NCBI RefSeq assembly: GCF_006345805.1
Contig: NC_043011.1
Span: forward strand, 33,182,464-33,246,463
DNA: 64,000 nucleotides
Origin: Octopus sinensis
Lineage: Eukaryota
Direction: 5' to 3'
The notes under the pieces are model-generated. The model did not search any database. It saw nothing but the letters and a program-made list of their open reading frames with translations, and was not told the origin of the DNA. A program made the position numbers and the translations under genes. Below, piece by piece: positions 1 to 27,314 of this stretch. Each line of letters starts with the position of its first letter. Within the stretch, counting starts at the first letter, position 1.

Positions 1-94
1 GTAAGGAATTTTTTGGTTTCGTAGAGTCCTTCCTCTCTAATACTATTAGATATGTCAACCACAAACTGGATGTCAATAGGTTCAACTCCACAGA
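1..94 (-). CDS. Exon (truncated by window edge): start of a VWA domain
   Basis: cacactactag| phase-1 acceptor; (V)[30 protein letters not shown] matches VWA beta-A with MIDAS DxSxS. Confidence 0.85.
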
Positions 95-27000: not shown

Positions 27001-27314
27001 GATGAACGGTGTCTCGAATAACAAACACGCAAGCCAGGAACAACGGTTGGCGACAAAGCTGGAAGTATCAGGAGTGTTAGTTGTTGTCTAACTTTGGCTC
27101 AGTGTACATACCCGCTCGAATTCGCTATGCCTTCTCTTGAATTACTTATGGGAAAAATAGCTTCAGTGCACGAACATTTCGGGTGACGAACGACCTTCAG
27201 GAACGAATTAATTTCGGAAATCGAGGTTCCAAATTCTACCGAGTCAAAATTCTACTTACCCTGACAGAAGACAACGGCACACAAGCAGCTAGCTAGGAGC
27301 AATACAATCTTCAT
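1..27314 (-). CDS. Multi-exon gene for a secreted PAN-PAN-EGF-VWD-C8-TIL-EGF-VWA mosaic protein (FCGBP/zonadhesin/VWF-like module set); 3' end lies beyond the left edge
   Basis: 11 phase-compatible coding exons join into one open frame: 27260-27314, 22510-22590, 19246-19485, 15954-16184, 14642-14755, 12029-12291, 9913-10226, 8921-9198, 6829-7022, 1350-1554, 1-94 (about 690 aa in window), plus an optional exon 21757-21931. Domains recognised from Cys spacing and motifs. Confidence 0.88.
1350..1554 (-). CDS. Exon: TILa/E-like module plus EGF-like domain
   Basis: tactttcag| and ccag|gtaagg; phase 0 to 1; [16 protein letters not shown]...GCVVNSQC...QCVCNKGF...TEC. Confidence 0.88.
3192..3296 (+). 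mobile_element. 5'-truncated SINE (family B) with 16-bp TSD
   Basis: TSD tatcacagcagctacg at 3176-3191 and 3297-3312; body matches the other family-B copies. Confidence 0.85.
3524..3740. repeat. 48-bp minisatellite, about 4.5 diverged units
   Basis: Units start with cagcatcacagcca at 3524, 3572, 3620 and 3668, with a degenerate unit at 3716. Confidence 0.9.
4187..4303. repeat. (AGAT)n microsatellite
   Basis: Direct inspection. Confidence 0.95.
4698..5265 (+). mobile_element. hAT transposon deletion derivative retaining the transposase C-terminus
   Basis: 4926-5040 reads [33 protein letters not shown], the hAT dimerisation-domain tail; cagagccgtc.../gggggcc-type ends. Confidence 0.7.
5656..6028 (-). 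mobile_element. tRNA-derived SINE (family C) with 14-bp TSD
   Basis: TSD ggatacctctttga at 5642-5655 and 6029-6042; pol III A/B-box head; near-identical to 53575-53958. Confidence 0.9.
6829..7022 (-). CDS. Exon: TIL domain, ending at a GC donor
   Basis: tcatctag| acceptor; CSENMEY...SGCQPTC...[24 protein letters not shown]; donor AAG|GCAAGC, phase 0. Confidence 0.9.
7381..7603 (+). mobile_element. Mariner internal-deletion derivative
   Basis: TIR agggttgtccggaaagttcgtgccgattt / aaatcggcacgaactttccgacaaccc in (TA)n; [25 protein letters not shown] is the mariner transposase C-terminus. Confidence 0.88.
8001..8330 (+). mobile_element. Helentron/DINE-1-like non-autonomous element fragment
   Basis: ttacctc..ccttcgctaaggcggaggtattgttttcagtcgtgtttgtttgt...gatggattcggatgaaacttt resembles HINE/DINE-1 ends (from memory). 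Confidence 0.45.
8468..8842 (+). mobile_element. SINE family A copy
   Basis: ggctgtgtggtaag head, internal microsatellite, aaacaagtaaaagag-type tail; more than 15 copies in window. Confidence 0.85.
8921..9198 (-). CDS. Exon: C8 domain
   Basis: gctattcag| and tgtc|gtgagt; phase 2 to 1; C..I.NP.G.F.KC...[10 protein letters not shown]...C..LESFAAEC...V.NWR..TNC. Confidence 0.93.
9228..9615 (-). mobile_element. SINE family B dimer
   Basis: gcctttcatcctttcggggtcgat core; many copies in window. Confidence 0.85.
9913..10226 (-). CDS. Exon: VWD domain C-half
   Basis: cctttcag| and cag|gtaaga; phase 0 to 2; LRVSFDG...[16 protein letters not shown]. Confidence 0.93.
10331..10760 (+). mobile_element. 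SINE family A copy
   Basis: Full head-to-tail match to the other copies. Confidence 0.88.
10886..11045. mobile_element. Diverged half-copy of the MITE at 54386-54798
   Basis: Reverse complement aligns by eye to 54386-54550. Confidence 0.65.
11141..11910. repeat. Tandem duplication, period 370 bp, bounded by (CATA)n
   Basis: ggggttctgggatatg starts at 11141 and 11511; the unique parts differ by about one substitution. Confidence 0.92.
12029..12291 (-). CDS. Exon: VWD domain N-half with GDPH motif
   Basis: ctgttacag| and agg|gtaagt; phase 1 to 0; [27 protein letters not shown]. Confidence 0.93.
13370..13895. mobile_element. TcMar (Tc2/pogo-like) MITE
   Basis: 27-bp TIR tatcgtaaatcctcgaggataatccgc vs reverse complement taccgtaaatcctcgagtatagtccgc (24/27); TA ends. 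Confidence 0.8.
14642..14755 (-). CDS. Exon: EGF-like domain (too short for the ORF track)
   Basis: cttttccag| and tatg|gtaaag; 114 nt, phase 1-1; [37 protein letters not shown]. Confidence 0.85.
15380..15600 (+). mobile_element. RTE LINE 3' end remnant
   Basis: [16 protein letters not shown] matches the RTE C-terminal C-x2-C...SRIGL motif. Confidence 0.65.
15954..16184 (-). CDS. Exon: PAN/apple domain 2
   Basis: attccag| and ccga|gtacgt; 231 nt, phase 1-1; [17 protein letters not shown]...KCDLS...WDFYQK. Confidence 0.88.
16704..16759. repeat. 19-bp triplication of a SINE-A tail segment
   Basis: gctggggcaccgccattaa x3. Confidence 0.9.
16930..17400 (+). mobile_element. Degenerate RTE-type LINE ORF2 3' remnant
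   Basis: ...RLRTRWLEN...MTAASDR resembles the RTE GRPRTRW tail; frame broken. Confidence 0.5.
17832..18255 (+). mobile_element. SINE family B tandem dimer
   Basis: Two consecutive units. Confidence 0.88.
18295..19165 (-). mobile_element. SINE family B multimer (about 4 units), inverted relative to 17832-18255
   Basis: Repeated gaaaggatgaaaggcaaagtcgacctcggcggaatttgaact. Confidence 0.88.
19246..19485 (-). CDS. Exon: PAN/apple domain 1
   Basis: ttcttccag| and aacc|gtaagt; 240 nt, phase 1-1; [17 protein letters not shown]...NCFLS...DFYQ pattern. Confidence 0.88.
19712..19991. mobile_element. MITE with long imperfect TIRs
   Basis: gcagatcgagaaattgattttttgtaact...cttcggacactggtagaatgtatcatataaaac is mirrored at 19898-19972. 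Confidence 0.8.
21757..21931 (-). CDS. Candidate exon (I)KGEGSMY...NICG.../GPCNCK(G), frameshifted as assembled
   Basis: Poly-Y tract, branch-like actaac and ggtcttag| acceptor; aagg|gtacgc donor; 175 nt (3n+1). The phase-1 frame hits TAA at 21765-21767; removing 1 nt gives a symmetric phase-1 exon. Confidence 0.5.
22510..22590 (-). CDS. Exon: propeptide-like (D)[26 protein letters not shown]
   Basis: tttttttacactag| acceptor and gaa|gtaagt donor; 81 nt, open only in the phase 1-1 frame; contains an R-X-R-R motif. Confidence 0.78.
22655..23693. mobile_element. Inverted-repeat element (about 75-83 bp arms) with nested SINE A (22933-23305)
   Basis: 22655-22728 is the reverse complement of 23611-23693, with one indel. 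Confidence 0.7.
23825..24189. mobile_element. hAT (Charlie-like) MITE
   Basis: cagtggttctcaacc / ggtcgggaaccattg termini. Confidence 0.7.
24830..25140 (-). mobile_element. tRNA-derived SINE (family E)
   Basis: Reverse-complement head ggctcagtggttagagcgtcgagctt...gagttcgaatcc with A/B boxes. Confidence 0.7.

What the first reader, a model, noticed from the sequence alone, without database searches (positions are those of the whole stretch)
1..27314. Secreted mosaic protein with an unusual order: PAN-PAN-EGF-VWD-C8-TIL-E-EGF-VWA
Seen: 11 phase-compatible exons give one frame from a signal peptide to a VWA domain; four of them (signal peptide, propeptide, EGF, VWA) are missed by the ORF track. 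Established: VWD-C8-TIL-E followed by a VWA domain is the D3-A1 arrangement of von Willebrand factor; PAN/apple domains bind glycans or proteins; FCGBP and mucins use VWD-C8-TIL for polymer assembly. Inference: tandem PAN domains placed in front of a single VWF-like D-A unit is an architecture I do not recognise from characterised proteins. It could be a cephalopod mucus, egg-coat, adhesion or haemolymph-clotting/immune scaffold.
Basis: partly seen in the sequence, partly recalled or inferred. Interest (0 to 1): 0.75.

Follow-up and report, generated by a model that had tools for sequence, protein, structure and literature searches.

The report
Octopus secreted PAN–VWD–VWA mosaic protein gene
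The window holds most of a real, already annotated but unstudied Octopus sinensis gene for a secreted cysteine-rich protein that joins two PAN/apple modules to an FCGBP-like VWD-C8-TIL unit and a VWA domain. This is an octopod-specific reshuffle of a common molluscan mucus/matrix protein family, not a new kind of protein.

Summary
Eleven minus-strand exons (window 27314 down to 1) splice in frame and translate exactly to residues 1-689 of an 844-aa protein already predicted for Octopus sinensis chromosome CM016873.1. A twelfth exon lies about 2 kb left of the window. Pfam calls PAN x2, VWD, C8, TIL and VWA. The two "EGF" and the "E" calls rest on cysteine patterns, sub-threshold hits, homologues and AlphaFold.

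Argonauta hians has an ortholog with the same exon lengths and phases. It also has an unannotated but conserved copy of the small exon 2. Nonsynonymous change is far below saturated synonymous change in every domain exon, so this is one conserved gene.

Residues 203-844 (EGF-VWD-C8-TIL-E-EGF-VWA) are collinear with Mytilus "zonadhesin-like" proteins. A marine metatranscriptome protein has PAN x3-VWD-C8-TIL-E-Kunitz x2. An octopus paralog with the same domain types in permuted order is found in skin mucus.

The PAN-PAN head on this block was found only in octopods. The D unit is closest to FCGBP and carries the GDPH autocleavage motif with its tethering cysteine. The VWA has a complete MIDAS.

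Most likely role: a secreted mucus/matrix adaptor. Tissue and ligands are unknown.

The parts
27363..27371 (-). TATA box (TATATAAAG), 57 nt upstream of the start codon; putative core promoter
   Evidence: Read directly from the sequence. No homologous exon lies further upstream in 27.3-64 kb. Promoter function is inferred.
27260..27314 (-). Exon 1 (55 nt, ends in phase 1): ATG plus signal peptide [18 protein letters not shown]
   Evidence: donor GTAAGT. Argonauta exon 1 is also 55 nt. The signal peptide was judged by eye from its n/h/c regions; no predictor was run.
22510..22590 (-). Exon 2 (81 nt, phase 1-1 cassette): [27 protein letters not shown]
   Evidence: A syntenic, unannotated 75-nt copy with AG/GTAAGT sites and an open frame lies in Argonauta intron 1 at L003 10643..10717 (tblastn E 8e-6). 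The RYRR site is not conserved there.
19246..19485 (-). Exon 3 (240 nt, phase 1-1): PAN/apple domain 1, with 5 Cys including an orphan Cys59
   Evidence: Pfam PAN_1. AlphaFold pLDDT above 95. Foldseek matches to apple/PAN structures. Same length in Argonauta, with all 5 Cys conserved.
15954..16184 (-). Exon 4 (231 nt, phase 1-1): PAN/apple domain 2, with 4 core Cys
   Evidence: Pfam PAN_1 second stretch.. The four Cys are invariant in alignment A2. dN/dS about 0.16.
14642..14755 (-). Exon 5 (114 nt, phase 1-1): EGF-like module a. The six-Cys pattern is conserved; a seventh Cys (C230) is present in Octopus but not in Argonauta
   Evidence: No Pfam hit. pLDDT 68-83 with beta-hairpins. 70% identical in Argonauta.
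12029..12291 (-). Exon 6 (263 nt, phase 1 to 0): N-terminal half of VWD, with C252-x3-G256-D257|P258-H259 (GDPH autocleavage motif)
   Evidence: Pfam VWD. GDPH located. Motif conserved across homologues. FCGBP PDB chains begin at the aligned PH.
9913..10226 (-). Exon 7 (314 nt, phase 0 to 2): C-terminal half of VWD, with GLC389GDC392NG (CxxC; C389 invariant)
8921..9198 (-). Exon 8 (278 nt, phase 2 to 1): C8 module
   Evidence: Pfam C8, 3.9e-12. All 9 Cys conserved in Argonauta.
6829..7022 (-). Exon 9 (194 nt, phase 1 to 0): TIL module, followed by a GC-AG intron
   Evidence: Pfam TIL, 1.5e-7. GC donor in Octopus, GT in Argonauta.
1350..1554 (-). Exon 10 (205 nt, phase 0 to 1): E (TILa-like) module plus EGF-like module b; contains RGRR
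   Evidence: Sub-threshold EGF_3/TILa hits. Aligns with the tail of the FCGBP repeat. pLDDT about 90. 76% identical in Argonauta, the most conserved exon.
1..94 (-). Exon 11, first 94 of 230 nt: start of the VWA domain, with Cys660 and MIDAS D672-x-S674-x-S676. The gene continues to the left of the window: the rest of E11, then E12 about 1.9-2.2 kb beyond.
   Evidence: Pfam VWA 666-834 on the full protein.

Best explanation
Window 1-27314 (minus strand) is the 5' 27.3 kb of a single 29.5-kb, 12-exon Octopus sinensis gene. It encodes an 844-aa secreted, disulfide-rich extracellular protein with this layout: signal peptide, short cassette peptide, PAN, PAN, EGF-like, VWD-C8-TIL-E, EGF-like, VWA.

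**Shown**
- The exon structure, and its identity to the public protein model.
- The domain calls.
- The orthology and purifying selection against Argonauta.
- The D unit's closest solved relatives are FCGBP repeats.
- The two PANs have the apple fold.
- The VWA has all five MIDAS residues (D672, S674, S676, T743, D775) and terminal cysteines (C660, C843).

**Inferred mechanism**
1. The protein enters the secretory pathway and the D assembly folds.
2. The VWD cuts itself between D257 and P258 early in biosynthesis, as all GDPH-bearing FCGBP domains do.
3. The PAN-PAN-EGF head (to residue 257) then stays on the body (258-844) through the first VWD beta-strand and a single disulfide. That disulfide is equivalent to FCGBP C472-C611, here C252 and probably C389.
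4. The PAN pair supplies a glycan- or protein-binding end.
5. The VWA supplies a metal-dependent end of the collagen-VI/PTMP1/integrin-I type.
6. The molecule therefore acts as a bivalent adaptor or cross-linker in a secreted matrix.
7. An odd cysteine count (49 mature in Octopus, 47 in Argonauta; the orphan Cys59 in PAN1 is the likeliest candidate) allows one intermolecular disulfide.

The most likely setting is epithelial mucus or another secreted matrix. The tissue is not established.
For: **Gene structure**
- exact translation to P0001; AG/GT(GC) junctions throughout.
- the locus is GCA_006345805.1, CM016873.1.
- Octopus and Argonauta exons have identical lengths and phases. pN is 0.13-0.29 against pS 0.66-0.82 in the domain exons.

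**Single gene**
- The only signal peptide is in E1.
- The VWD exons begin in phase 1 and have no start codon of their own.
- The Argonauta model joins the same exons within 14 kb.

**Domains**
-.

**D unit**
- FCGBP 8rde scores E 5.9e-241 (summed over repeats), with best stretch 250-641. Chains 8r0t_C, 8r0t_B and 8qci_B start at the residue aligned to P258.
- TM 0.72-0.76 to FCGBP and MUC2 D3.

**GDPH chemistry and the single tether disulfide**
- PMC8267560 and PMC10880436.
- the Cys five residues before the Asp, and C389, are conserved.

**PAN fold**
- pLDDT above 95, pTM 0.80.
- matches to plasma kallikrein/FXI apple domains, Toxoplasma MIC4, Sarcocystis SML-2 and the HGF N domain.

**VWA relatives**
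- collagen VI alpha3 8e-20; Mytilus PTMP1 7e-16; integrin alpha1/alpha2 I domains.

**Mucus setting**
- The paralog LOC115209496 (P0015) carries the same domain types and is identified by peptides in O. vulgaris skin mucus. That proteome is enriched for VWD, C8 and VWA proteins (PMC10138644).
Against: - No transcript or peptide evidence for this gene itself was available.
- Six of its tryptic peptides were absent from the skin-mucus tables, though the stored file is truncated.
- No transcript-derived fragments appeared among the homologues.
- GDPH cleavage, the disulfide map, metal dependence and every ligand are inferred from homology.
- FCGBP's own function is still unknown, and it was not found covalently cross-linked to other mucus proteins. 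'Cross-linker' is therefore a hypothesis even for the best-studied relative.
- The position equivalent to FCGBP Q4094, which partly affects cleavage, is Met271 here. Several FCGBP repeats also have Met at the aligned position (FMG/MMG).
- The full-length AlphaFold model is poor for the VWA (pLDDT 45-63) because the alignment was shallow there.
Confidence: 0.6

Rival explanations
1. Gamete-recognition or egg-coat protein. In this reading it is a zonadhesin-like adhesin made in testis, oviducal gland or follicle cells. The PAN pair would bind egg-coat glycans, and the D/VWA units would anchor it.
For: - Public pipelines name the ortholog 'zonadhesin-like'.
- Transcripts annotated as ZAN are up-regulated in the O. 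maya oviducal gland at fertilisation, and were measured in white body and testis (PMC8976471, PMC6522055).
- Tandem PAN lectins bind galactose (Foldseek hits MIC4 and SML-2).
Against: - The name comes only from VWD-C8-TIL similarity.
- Zonadhesin's defining MAM domains, mucin region, multiple D units and transmembrane anchor are absent.
- The O. maya ZAN qPCR primers do not match the window even with 4 mismatches. Nothing therefore links those transcripts to this gene.
- PAN1 is the least conserved domain (50% identity) but is still under constraint. There is no sign of the rapid evolution typical of gamete-recognition proteins, though this was tested on only one species pair.
Confidence: 0.12
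2. Haemolymph clotting or immune scaffold. In this reading it is a VWF/hemolectin-like protein released by haemocytes. It would multimerise through the D assembly and capture matrix or microbes through the VWA and PAN domains.
For: - The D assembly followed by a VWA parallels VWF D3-A1. Foldseek's top hit is the VWF D1-A1 tubule.
- Apple domains are typical of the contact-phase clotting proteins FXI and prekallikrein.
- The odd Cys count allows covalent oligomers.
Against: - There is no D1-D2 propeptide, no CTCK dimerisation knot and no VWC repeats. The VWF route to long multimers is therefore missing.
- By sequence the D unit is closer to FCGBP than to VWF (bits 805 versus 188).
- There is no haemocyte evidence.
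Confidence: 0.12
3. Annotation artefact. Two neighbouring genes, a PAN-PAN(-EGF) gene and a VWD...VWA gene, have been fused by gene prediction. Alternatively, the locus is not expressed.
For: - All models are computational.
- The O. vulgaris model (P0003) is a different, exon-skipping version with a non-secretory start at window 27914..27973. This shows how unstable prediction is at this locus.
- No transcript fragments were seen.
Against: - The VWD exon starts in phase 1, with no start codon or signal peptide of its own.
- Every exon is in a compatible phase.
- The identical 12-exon layout, including the tiny cassette exon, is conserved in Argonauta across saturated synonymous divergence, with pN well below pS in all exons.
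- The paralog P0015 and the unrelated P0117 also combine PAN with the D unit in one polypeptide. P0117 comes from an intronless 2.6-kb metatranscriptome contig.
Confidence: 0.05

Closest known systems
FCGBP (IgGFc-binding protein; PDB 8rde, 8r0t, 8qci)
   Same: - It is the best sequence and structure match for residues 250-641 (VWD-C8-TIL-E).
- The GDPH motif sits at the same place.
- The tethering Cys lies five residues before the Asp.
- It is a secreted mucus-associated protein.
   Different: - FCGBP has 7-13 tandem D assemblies and its own N-terminal domain.
- It has no PAN, no EGF-like spacer and no VWA.
- The octopus protein has a single D assembly, so cleavage would separate its whole head from its body.
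von Willebrand factor D3-A1 segment
   Same: - The order is the same: D assembly, then a disulfide-clasped VWA.
- Foldseek's top hit is the VWF D1-A1 tubule.
   Different: - There is no D1-D2 propeptide, D', A2/A3, D4, VWC or CTCK.
- An EGF-like module sits between E and the VWA.
- VWF D3 has no GDPH.
- The sequence similarity is weaker than to FCGBP.
Mytilus 'zonadhesin-like' proteins (e.g. XP_063402487.1, P0021; same 90% cluster as giant 2865-3788-aa proteins)
   Same: Collinear with residues 203-844 at 34% identity (E 2e-99), covering EGF-VWD(GDPH, CG[DN]C)-C8-TIL-E-EGF-VWA.
   Different: - There is no PAN pair.
- In mussels the block is part of much larger repeat proteins.
- The function is uncharacterised.
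Octopus paralog LOC115209496 (XP_036357551.1 / A0A7E6EPG6, P0015)
   Same: - It has the same domain types: VWA, EGF, VWD-C8-TIL-E/EGF and PAN.
- Its D unit is 42% identical, and its PAN pair is weakly homologous (E 2e-6).
- It is detected in O. vulgaris skin mucus.
   Different: - The order is permuted: VWA-EGFx4-D-EGF-PAN-PAN.
- It lies on a different chromosome.
- Its C-terminal DUF7083 tail looks like an annotation add-on.
Metatranscriptome protein P0117 (JGI 3300009757, organism unknown)
   Same: Signal peptide, then PAN x3, VWD(GDPH)-C8-TIL-TILa; collinear with residues 52-641 (25% identity, E 3e-50).
   Different: It ends in two Kunitz inhibitor domains instead of EGF-VWA, and it has no EGF between the PANs and the VWD.
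Tandem apple/PAN binding modules (FXI and prekallikrein apple domains; Toxoplasma MIC4; Sarcocystis SML-2; HGF N domain)
   Same: - The fold matches, and so does the tandem arrangement.
- These modules bind proteins, galactose or heparin.
   Different: - Sequence identity is only 11-22%.
- No ligand-site residues were compared.
- The nearest sequence relatives are uncharacterised octopod multi-PAN proteins, for example XP_036361601.1 with about 20 PANs.
Collagen VI alpha3 VWA domains, Mytilus PTMP1 (4cn8) and integrin alpha1/alpha2 I domains
   Same: These are the best solved matches for the VWA (8e-20, 7e-16 and about 1e-4 respectively). The MIDAS motif is complete.
   Different: Ligand specificity cannot be read from these matches, and the context is a single VWA at the C-terminus.

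Membership tests
D assembly proteins (VWD-C8-TIL-E) | VWD, C8 and TIL modules in that order | tested here: met
   Pfam VWD 113 bits, C8 46.7 bits and TIL 31.9 bits, all above cut-off. Foldseek TM 0.72-0.76 to FCGBP and MUC2 D3.
D assembly proteins (VWD-C8-TIL-E) | E (TILa-type) module after TIL | tested here: inconclusive
   Pfam TILa scores only E 0.025. However, the segment aligns with the tail of the FCGBP repeat to residue about 641, has pLDDT about 90, and TILa passes cut-off in P0117.
GDPH-autocleaving VWD domains (FCGBP, MUC2 C-terminus, RGM type) | G-D-P-H between the first two VWD strands. Asp and His are essential. | tested here: met
   G256-D257-P258-H259, aligned to the FCGBP GDPH sites. 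Requirement taken from PMC10880436.
GDPH-autocleaving VWD domains (FCGBP, MUC2 C-terminus, RGM type) | A Cys five residues before the Asp, plus a partner Cys near the end of the VWD, forming the single inter-fragment disulfide | tested here: met
   C252 and the invariant C389 are present and conserved. The FCGBP pair is C472-C611. The pairing itself is not shown.
GDPH-autocleaving VWD domains (FCGBP, MUC2 C-terminus, RGM type) | Actual Asp-Pro cleavage | not testable with these tools
   Needs protein chemistry.
von Willebrand factor | D1-D2 propeptide, D'D3, A1-A2-A3, D4, VWC repeats and a CTCK knot | tested here: not met
   Only one D assembly and one VWA. There is no VWC or CTCK, and the protein ends 1 residue after the VWA clasp Cys.
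Gel-forming mucins | A long Pro/Thr/Ser-rich O-glycosylated domain plus CTCK | tested here: not met
   No PTS region in the 844 aa, and only 7 N-glycosylation sequons.
FCGBP | Many tandem D assemblies | tested here: not met
   A single D assembly.
Zonadhesin | MAM domains, a mucin-like region, several D units and a transmembrane anchor | tested here: not met
   None are present. The public name 'zonadhesin-like' reflects VWD-C8-TIL similarity only.
PAN/apple domains | PAN_1 profile, four core Cys (two disulfides) and the alpha/beta apple fold | tested here: met
   PAN_1 50.6 bits with two stretches. The four Cys of PAN2 are invariant in A2. The pLDDT above 95 model matches the apple domains of FXI, PK, MIC4, SML-2 and HGF-N.
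MIDAS-type VWA domains | DxSxS ... T ... D metal site | tested here: met
   D672, S674, S676, T743 and D775 were read from P0001. The spacing (67 and 32 residues) is like that of the integrin alpha2 I domain (own knowledge), and the residues are conserved in Argonauta. Metal binding was not tested.
EGF-like domains | Six-Cys pattern C-C-C-CxC-C and a profile match | tested here: inconclusive
   - Module a: the pattern is present (six Cys in Argonauta, seven in Octopus), but there is no Pfam hit.
- Module b: EGF_3 1.2e-3 and EGF_CA 1.9e-3, both below cut-off. The Mytilus equivalent is above cut-off.
Secreted proteins | An N-terminal signal peptide, with no membrane anchor | not tested
   MK + [14 protein letters not shown] + CQ was read by eye, and there is no C-terminal hydrophobic tail. 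No predictor was available.

The most novel reading that the evidence does not exclude
This protein has only one D assembly, and the GDPH site sits exactly at the join between the PAN-PAN-EGF head and the body. Autocleavage would therefore leave an octopod-specific lectin-like head held on by one beta-strand and one disulfide. The protein could then be a redox- or force-releasable adhesive link. One possible setting is reversible sucker or skin adhesion, or egg-string cement, with the VWA fixed in the matrix and the PAN pair gripping a glycan surface. No such use of GDPH cleavage has been described for any characterised protein.
Probability: 0.12. Interest if true: 0.55.

Novelty: new variant of a known kind. 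Interest (0 to 1): 0.3.

Why it matters
If the molecular reading holds, this is a compact, single-D-assembly relative of FCGBP. FCGBP is a mucus protein whose function is still unknown, and here GDPH autocleavage would split the protein into two functionally different halves. That could make it a simpler model than the 13-repeat FCGBP for asking what GDPH cleavage and the single tether disulfide are for.

It also gives a clean example of 1-1-phase exon shuffling. PAN modules from an octopod-specific PAN expansion were added to an old molluscan EGF-VWD-C8-TIL-E-EGF-VWA block.

Beyond that it is an ordinary member of a large, poorly studied family of molluscan secreted matrix and mucus proteins.

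Tried and rejected
- **Guessed 'E' exon.** My first guess of a separate cysteine-rich 'E' exon at window 5947..5777 was wrong. It is not in the annotated protein, and the E module lies in exon 10.
- **O. maya primers.** The 'zonadhesin' qPCR primers from PMC6522055 do not match the window with up to 4 mismatches.
- **Skin-mucus 'Zonadhesin-like'.** LOC115209190 in the skin-mucus proteome is probably a short protein (3 peptides giving 18% coverage), so it is not this gene.
- **Peptide search.** Six tryptic peptides of P0001 were not found in that paper's tables, although the stored file is truncated.
- **Argonaut eggcase paper.** The main text of the matrix paper (10.1101/2021.07.10.451900) was searched for the words VWD, PAN, zonadhesin and apple, and none occur. 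No sequences or supplementary tables were compared.
- **Full-length AlphaFold.** The model built with a 36-sequence alignment was uninformative for the PAN region and weak for the VWA. A second, PAN-only job fixed the PAN part.
- **Rest of the window.** There is no further VWD, PAN or VWA exon anywhere in 27.3-64 kb, so no tandem paralog lies in the window.
- **Rfam.** No match in the window.
- **VWF D3 intermolecular cysteines.** I tried to read the VWF D3 alignment to see whether equivalents of the D3 intermolecular cysteines exist. The printed alignment was cut before D3, so this remains untested.
- **dN/dS.** Ratios could not be computed for most exons because synonymous sites are saturated. 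Only pN versus pS is reported.

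
Full report
**What is in the window.**
The sequence is eukaryotic: 34-47% G+C, dense microsatellites, and short exon-sized open frames. A draft translation of the obvious minus-strand exons was searched against the protein collection. It retrieved an 844-aa protein, P0001, which the window itself encodes and which is already held by NCBI, UniRef and nr.

The look-up of P0001's encoding contig places it on Octopus sinensis assembly GCA_006345805.1, chromosome CM016873.1, as a 29.5-kb gene. 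The wider locus L002 is base-for-base identical to the window where they overlap.

**Exon structure.**
Exact matching of P0001 to the three minus-strand frames, followed by inspection of the junctions, gives eleven coding exons in the window:

| Exon | Window coordinates | Length, phase | Content |
|---|---|---|---|
| E1 | 27314..27260 | 55 nt | ATG, signal peptide |
| E2 | 22590..22510 | 81 nt, 1-1 | short cassette peptide |
| E3 | 19485..19246 | 240 nt, 1-1 | PAN1 |
| E4 | 16184..15954 | 231 nt, 1-1 | PAN2 |
| E5 | 14755..14642 | 114 nt, 1-1 | EGF-like a |
| E6 | 12291..12029 | 263 nt | VWD, N half |
| E7 | 10226..9913 | 314 nt | VWD, C half |
| E8 | 9198..8921 | 278 nt | C8 |
| E9 | 7022..6829 | 194 nt | TIL |
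| E10 | 1554..1350 | 205 nt | E + EGF-like b |
| E11 | 94..1 | first 94 of 230 nt | start of VWA |

- A twelfth exon (330 nt with the stop codon) lies about 1.9-2.2 kb left of the window.
- All acceptors are AG. All donors are GT except a GC donor after E9.
- The concatenated exons translate exactly to P0001.
- A TATATAAAG box sits 57 nt upstream of the ATG.
- Nothing homologous lies further upstream in the remaining 36 kb of the window, which is mostly repeats.

**Domain calls.**
Pfam gives the following above its curated cut-offs:
- PAN_1, two stretches, 50.6 bits on the isolated N-terminus
- VWD 252-405
- C8 452-526
- TIL 529-580
- VWA 666-834

The two 'EGF' modules and the 'E' module are weaker.
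- **EGF-like a** has no Pfam hit. It has the classical six-cysteine spacing in Argonauta, and an extra seventh cysteine in Octopus. Its AlphaFold confidence is moderate.
- **The E + EGF-like b segment** gets only sub-threshold hits (EGF_3 1.2e-3, TILa 0.025). It aligns with the tail of every FCGBP repeat up to about residue 641 and is modelled at pLDDT about 90. The equivalent Mytilus segment is called EGF_3 above cut-off.

A PAN-only AlphaFold job, using an alignment of the PAN relatives, gave pLDDT above 95 and pTM 0.80 for both PANs. Foldseek matched them to the apple domains of plasma kallikrein and factor XI, to the tandem galactose-binding apple lectins MIC4 and SML-2, and to the HGF N domain.

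**One gene or two.**
No RNA data were available, but four lines of evidence argue for a single gene.
1. The only signal peptide is in E1. The first VWD exon starts in phase 1 and has no start codon.
2. The Argonauta hians ortholog (P0002, GAB1605714.1, 815 aa) was fetched with its locus L003. It has the same exons with the same lengths and phases in only 14 kb. The only difference among the annotated exons is a 6-nt deletion in the C8 exon.
3. Synonymous sites between the two genera are saturated (pS 0.66-0.82), while nonsynonymous differences are 0.13-0.29 in every domain exon. All cysteines are conserved except the two that Octopus alone has.
4. Two other proteins join PAN domains to this kind of D unit in one chain:
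   - the octopus paralog P0015;
   - P0117, from an intronless 2.6-kb metatranscriptome contig.

I put the fusion-artefact reading at about 5%.

**Exon 2.**
Even so, Argonauta intron 1 contains a syntenic 75-nt copy at L003 10643..10717. It has a polypyrimidine tract, an AG acceptor, a GTAAGT donor, phase 1-1 and an open frame (tblastn E 8e-6).
- Adding it gives an 840-aa Argonauta ORF.
- It is therefore a conserved, probably real, and possibly alternative cassette exon.
- Its furin-like RYRR is not conserved. The conserved part is ...Y..(Y/H)L(M/I)NV..PG. That weakens the 'propeptide' reading.

**How unusual is the architecture.**
An exhaustive HMMER search of 1.84 billion representative proteins with the PAN-PAN-EGF head found only 95 hits.
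- The strongest hits are octopod multi-PAN proteins, including O. sinensis LOC118764742 with about 20 PANs. Others are neighbours of that gene, O. bimaculoides and O. vulgaris relatives, an Argonauta protein, and octopus ADAMTS-like proteins with C-terminal PAN pairs.
- Among the 95 hits, only the Argonauta and O. vulgaris orthologs and P0117 also contain a VWD.
- No squid, cuttlefish or nautilus protein with this head plus a D unit was seen.

By contrast, residues 203-844 (EGF-VWD-C8-TIL-E-EGF-VWA) are collinear with a Mytilus 'zonadhesin-like' protein at 34% identity (E 2e-99). Pinctada proteins combine the same D unit and VWA with SUEL-lectin and TSP1 modules.

The molluscan subfamily shares two signatures:
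- CxCxxxGDPHY at the start of the VWD;
- a CG[DN]C motif near its end, in place of the vertebrate CGLCGN(F/Y)N.

The new element is therefore only the PAN-PAN head, added through symmetric 1-1 exons to an old molluscan block. The paralog P0015 carries a weakly related PAN pair at the opposite end (E 2e-6).

**How it most likely works.**
By sequence, the D unit is closest to FCGBP repeats, ahead of MUC5AC, VWF and MUC2. Structurally it superposes on FCGBP and MUC2 D3 at TM 0.72-0.76, and the top Foldseek hit is the VWF D1-A1 tubule.

It carries GDPH at 256-259. In FCGBP, every GDPH-bearing VWD is cleaved between Asp and Pro in the ER, and each pair of fragments is held by one disulfide, C472-C611 in vWD1 (PMC8267560). 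Asp and His are essential for cleavage, and cleavage stabilises the domain (PMC10880436). The deposited FCGBP chains 8r0t_B, 8r0t_C and 8qci_B begin exactly at the residue aligned with P258.

The octopus protein has the equivalent Cys five residues before the Asp (C252) and the invariant C389. I therefore infer cleavage at D257|P258. Because there is only one D unit, this would leave the entire PAN-PAN-EGF head attached to the body by a beta-strand and one disulfide.

The VWA has a complete MIDAS (D672, S674, S676, T743, D775) and terminal clasp cysteines (C660, C843). Its best solved relatives are collagen VI alpha3, the mussel byssal protein PTMP1 and the collagen-binding integrin I domains.

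The mature protein has an odd number of cysteines in both genera: 49 in Octopus and 47 in Argonauta. PAN1 has a conserved fifth cysteine (C59) that looks like an apple-type C1 without its C6 partner. One intermolecular disulfide is therefore plausible.

Taken together, the protein looks like a secreted two-ended adaptor for a mucus or matrix. Everything beyond the domain identities is inference.

**Physiological setting.**
The only empirical pointer is indirect. [quoted passage not shown]

This gene's own peptides were not found there, although the stored table is truncated. Octopus 'ZAN' transcripts reported in oviducal gland and white body cannot be tied to this locus. Mucus/epithelial secretion is my leading guess. 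Gamete/egg-coat and haemolymph roles remain open.

**Comparison and verdict.**
The protein works like a single-repeat FCGBP with added binding ends, and it has the D-then-A order of VWF D3-A1. It is not a member of any of the following families, because their defining parts are absent:

| Family | Defining parts that are absent |
|---|---|
| VWF | D1D2 propeptide, VWC, CTCK |
| Gel-forming mucins | PTS domain |
| FCGBP | many tandem D units |
| Zonadhesin | MAM domains, transmembrane anchor |

It is an already predicted but uncharacterised gene, and an octopod-specific architectural variant within a large molluscan family. A specialist would not be surprised by it. The mildly interesting points are the position of the GDPH site at the head/body join and the clean exon-shuffling history.

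Noticed in passing
L003 10643..10717 (Argonauta hians, intron 1 of the ortholog): An unannotated 75-nt exon homologous to Octopus exon 2. It has AG/GTAAGT sites, phase 1-1 and an open frame. Including it turns the 815-aa Argonauta model into an 840-aa ORF.
   Followed up: yes
window 6827..6828 (donor of intron 9, minus strand): There is a GC-AG intron after the TIL exon in O. sinensis. The orthologous Argonauta intron has a normal GT donor.
   Followed up: partly
window 14642..14755 and 12029..12291 (residues C230 and C247): Octopus has two extra cysteines, one in EGF-like module a and one just before the VWD. Both are absent in Argonauta. They may form an additional lineage-specific disulfide.
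   Followed up: partly
window 27914..27973 (minus strand): The O. vulgaris model CAI9736034.1 (P0003, 500 aa) starts at the position homologous to this stretch with a non-secretory peptide, MGMENEQKRQIATESIK. It also skips the PAN1, EGF, TIL and E-EGF exons. It looks like a mis-predicted version of the same gene.
   Followed up: partly
window 31649..33017: A 1.37-kb (CAAC)n microsatellite of about 343 copies. It causes the strong negative GC skew at 32-34 kb and long spurious (GWLV)n ORFs on the minus strand.
   Followed up: partly
window 55981..57390: A 488-bp unit repeated 2.9 times at 99% identity, which suggests a recent tandem duplication. Its content was not examined.
   Followed up: no
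window 11048..11884 (intron 6): A 370-bp unit repeated 2.3 times (94% identity), made of CA/CATA microsatellite plus unique sequence.
   Followed up: no
window 18730..19113, 38294..38699; also 3120..3326, 9230..9448, 17801..18199: Dispersed repeat copies with units of about 185 bp. Their translation contains ...[13 protein letters not shown](R/K)[10 protein letters not shown]..., and they occur in both orientations in introns and in intergenic DNA. They look SINE-like. There was no Rfam or tRNA match at gathering threshold.
   Followed up: partly
window 10673..10735, 23229..23285, 35775..35852, 37692..37775, 49464..49541, 60889..60969: A second dispersed repeat, whose translation reads ...[16 protein letters not shown].... 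It matches residues 206-231 of the MetaClust protein P0016, so that database protein probably contains an exonised or mis-called repeat.
   Followed up: no
window 27315..64000: No convincing protein-coding exon was seen in the 36 kb upstream of the gene. The contig look-up also lists no other gene within 10 kb on either side in O. sinensis. In Argonauta a CoaE-domain gene lies 5 kb downstream.
   Followed up: partly
P0015 residues about 1036-1108 (O. sinensis LOC115209496, not in the window): The paralog's C-terminal tail matches DUF7083 and follows a region without secreted-protein features. This may be a gene-model fusion with neighbouring sequence.
   Followed up: no
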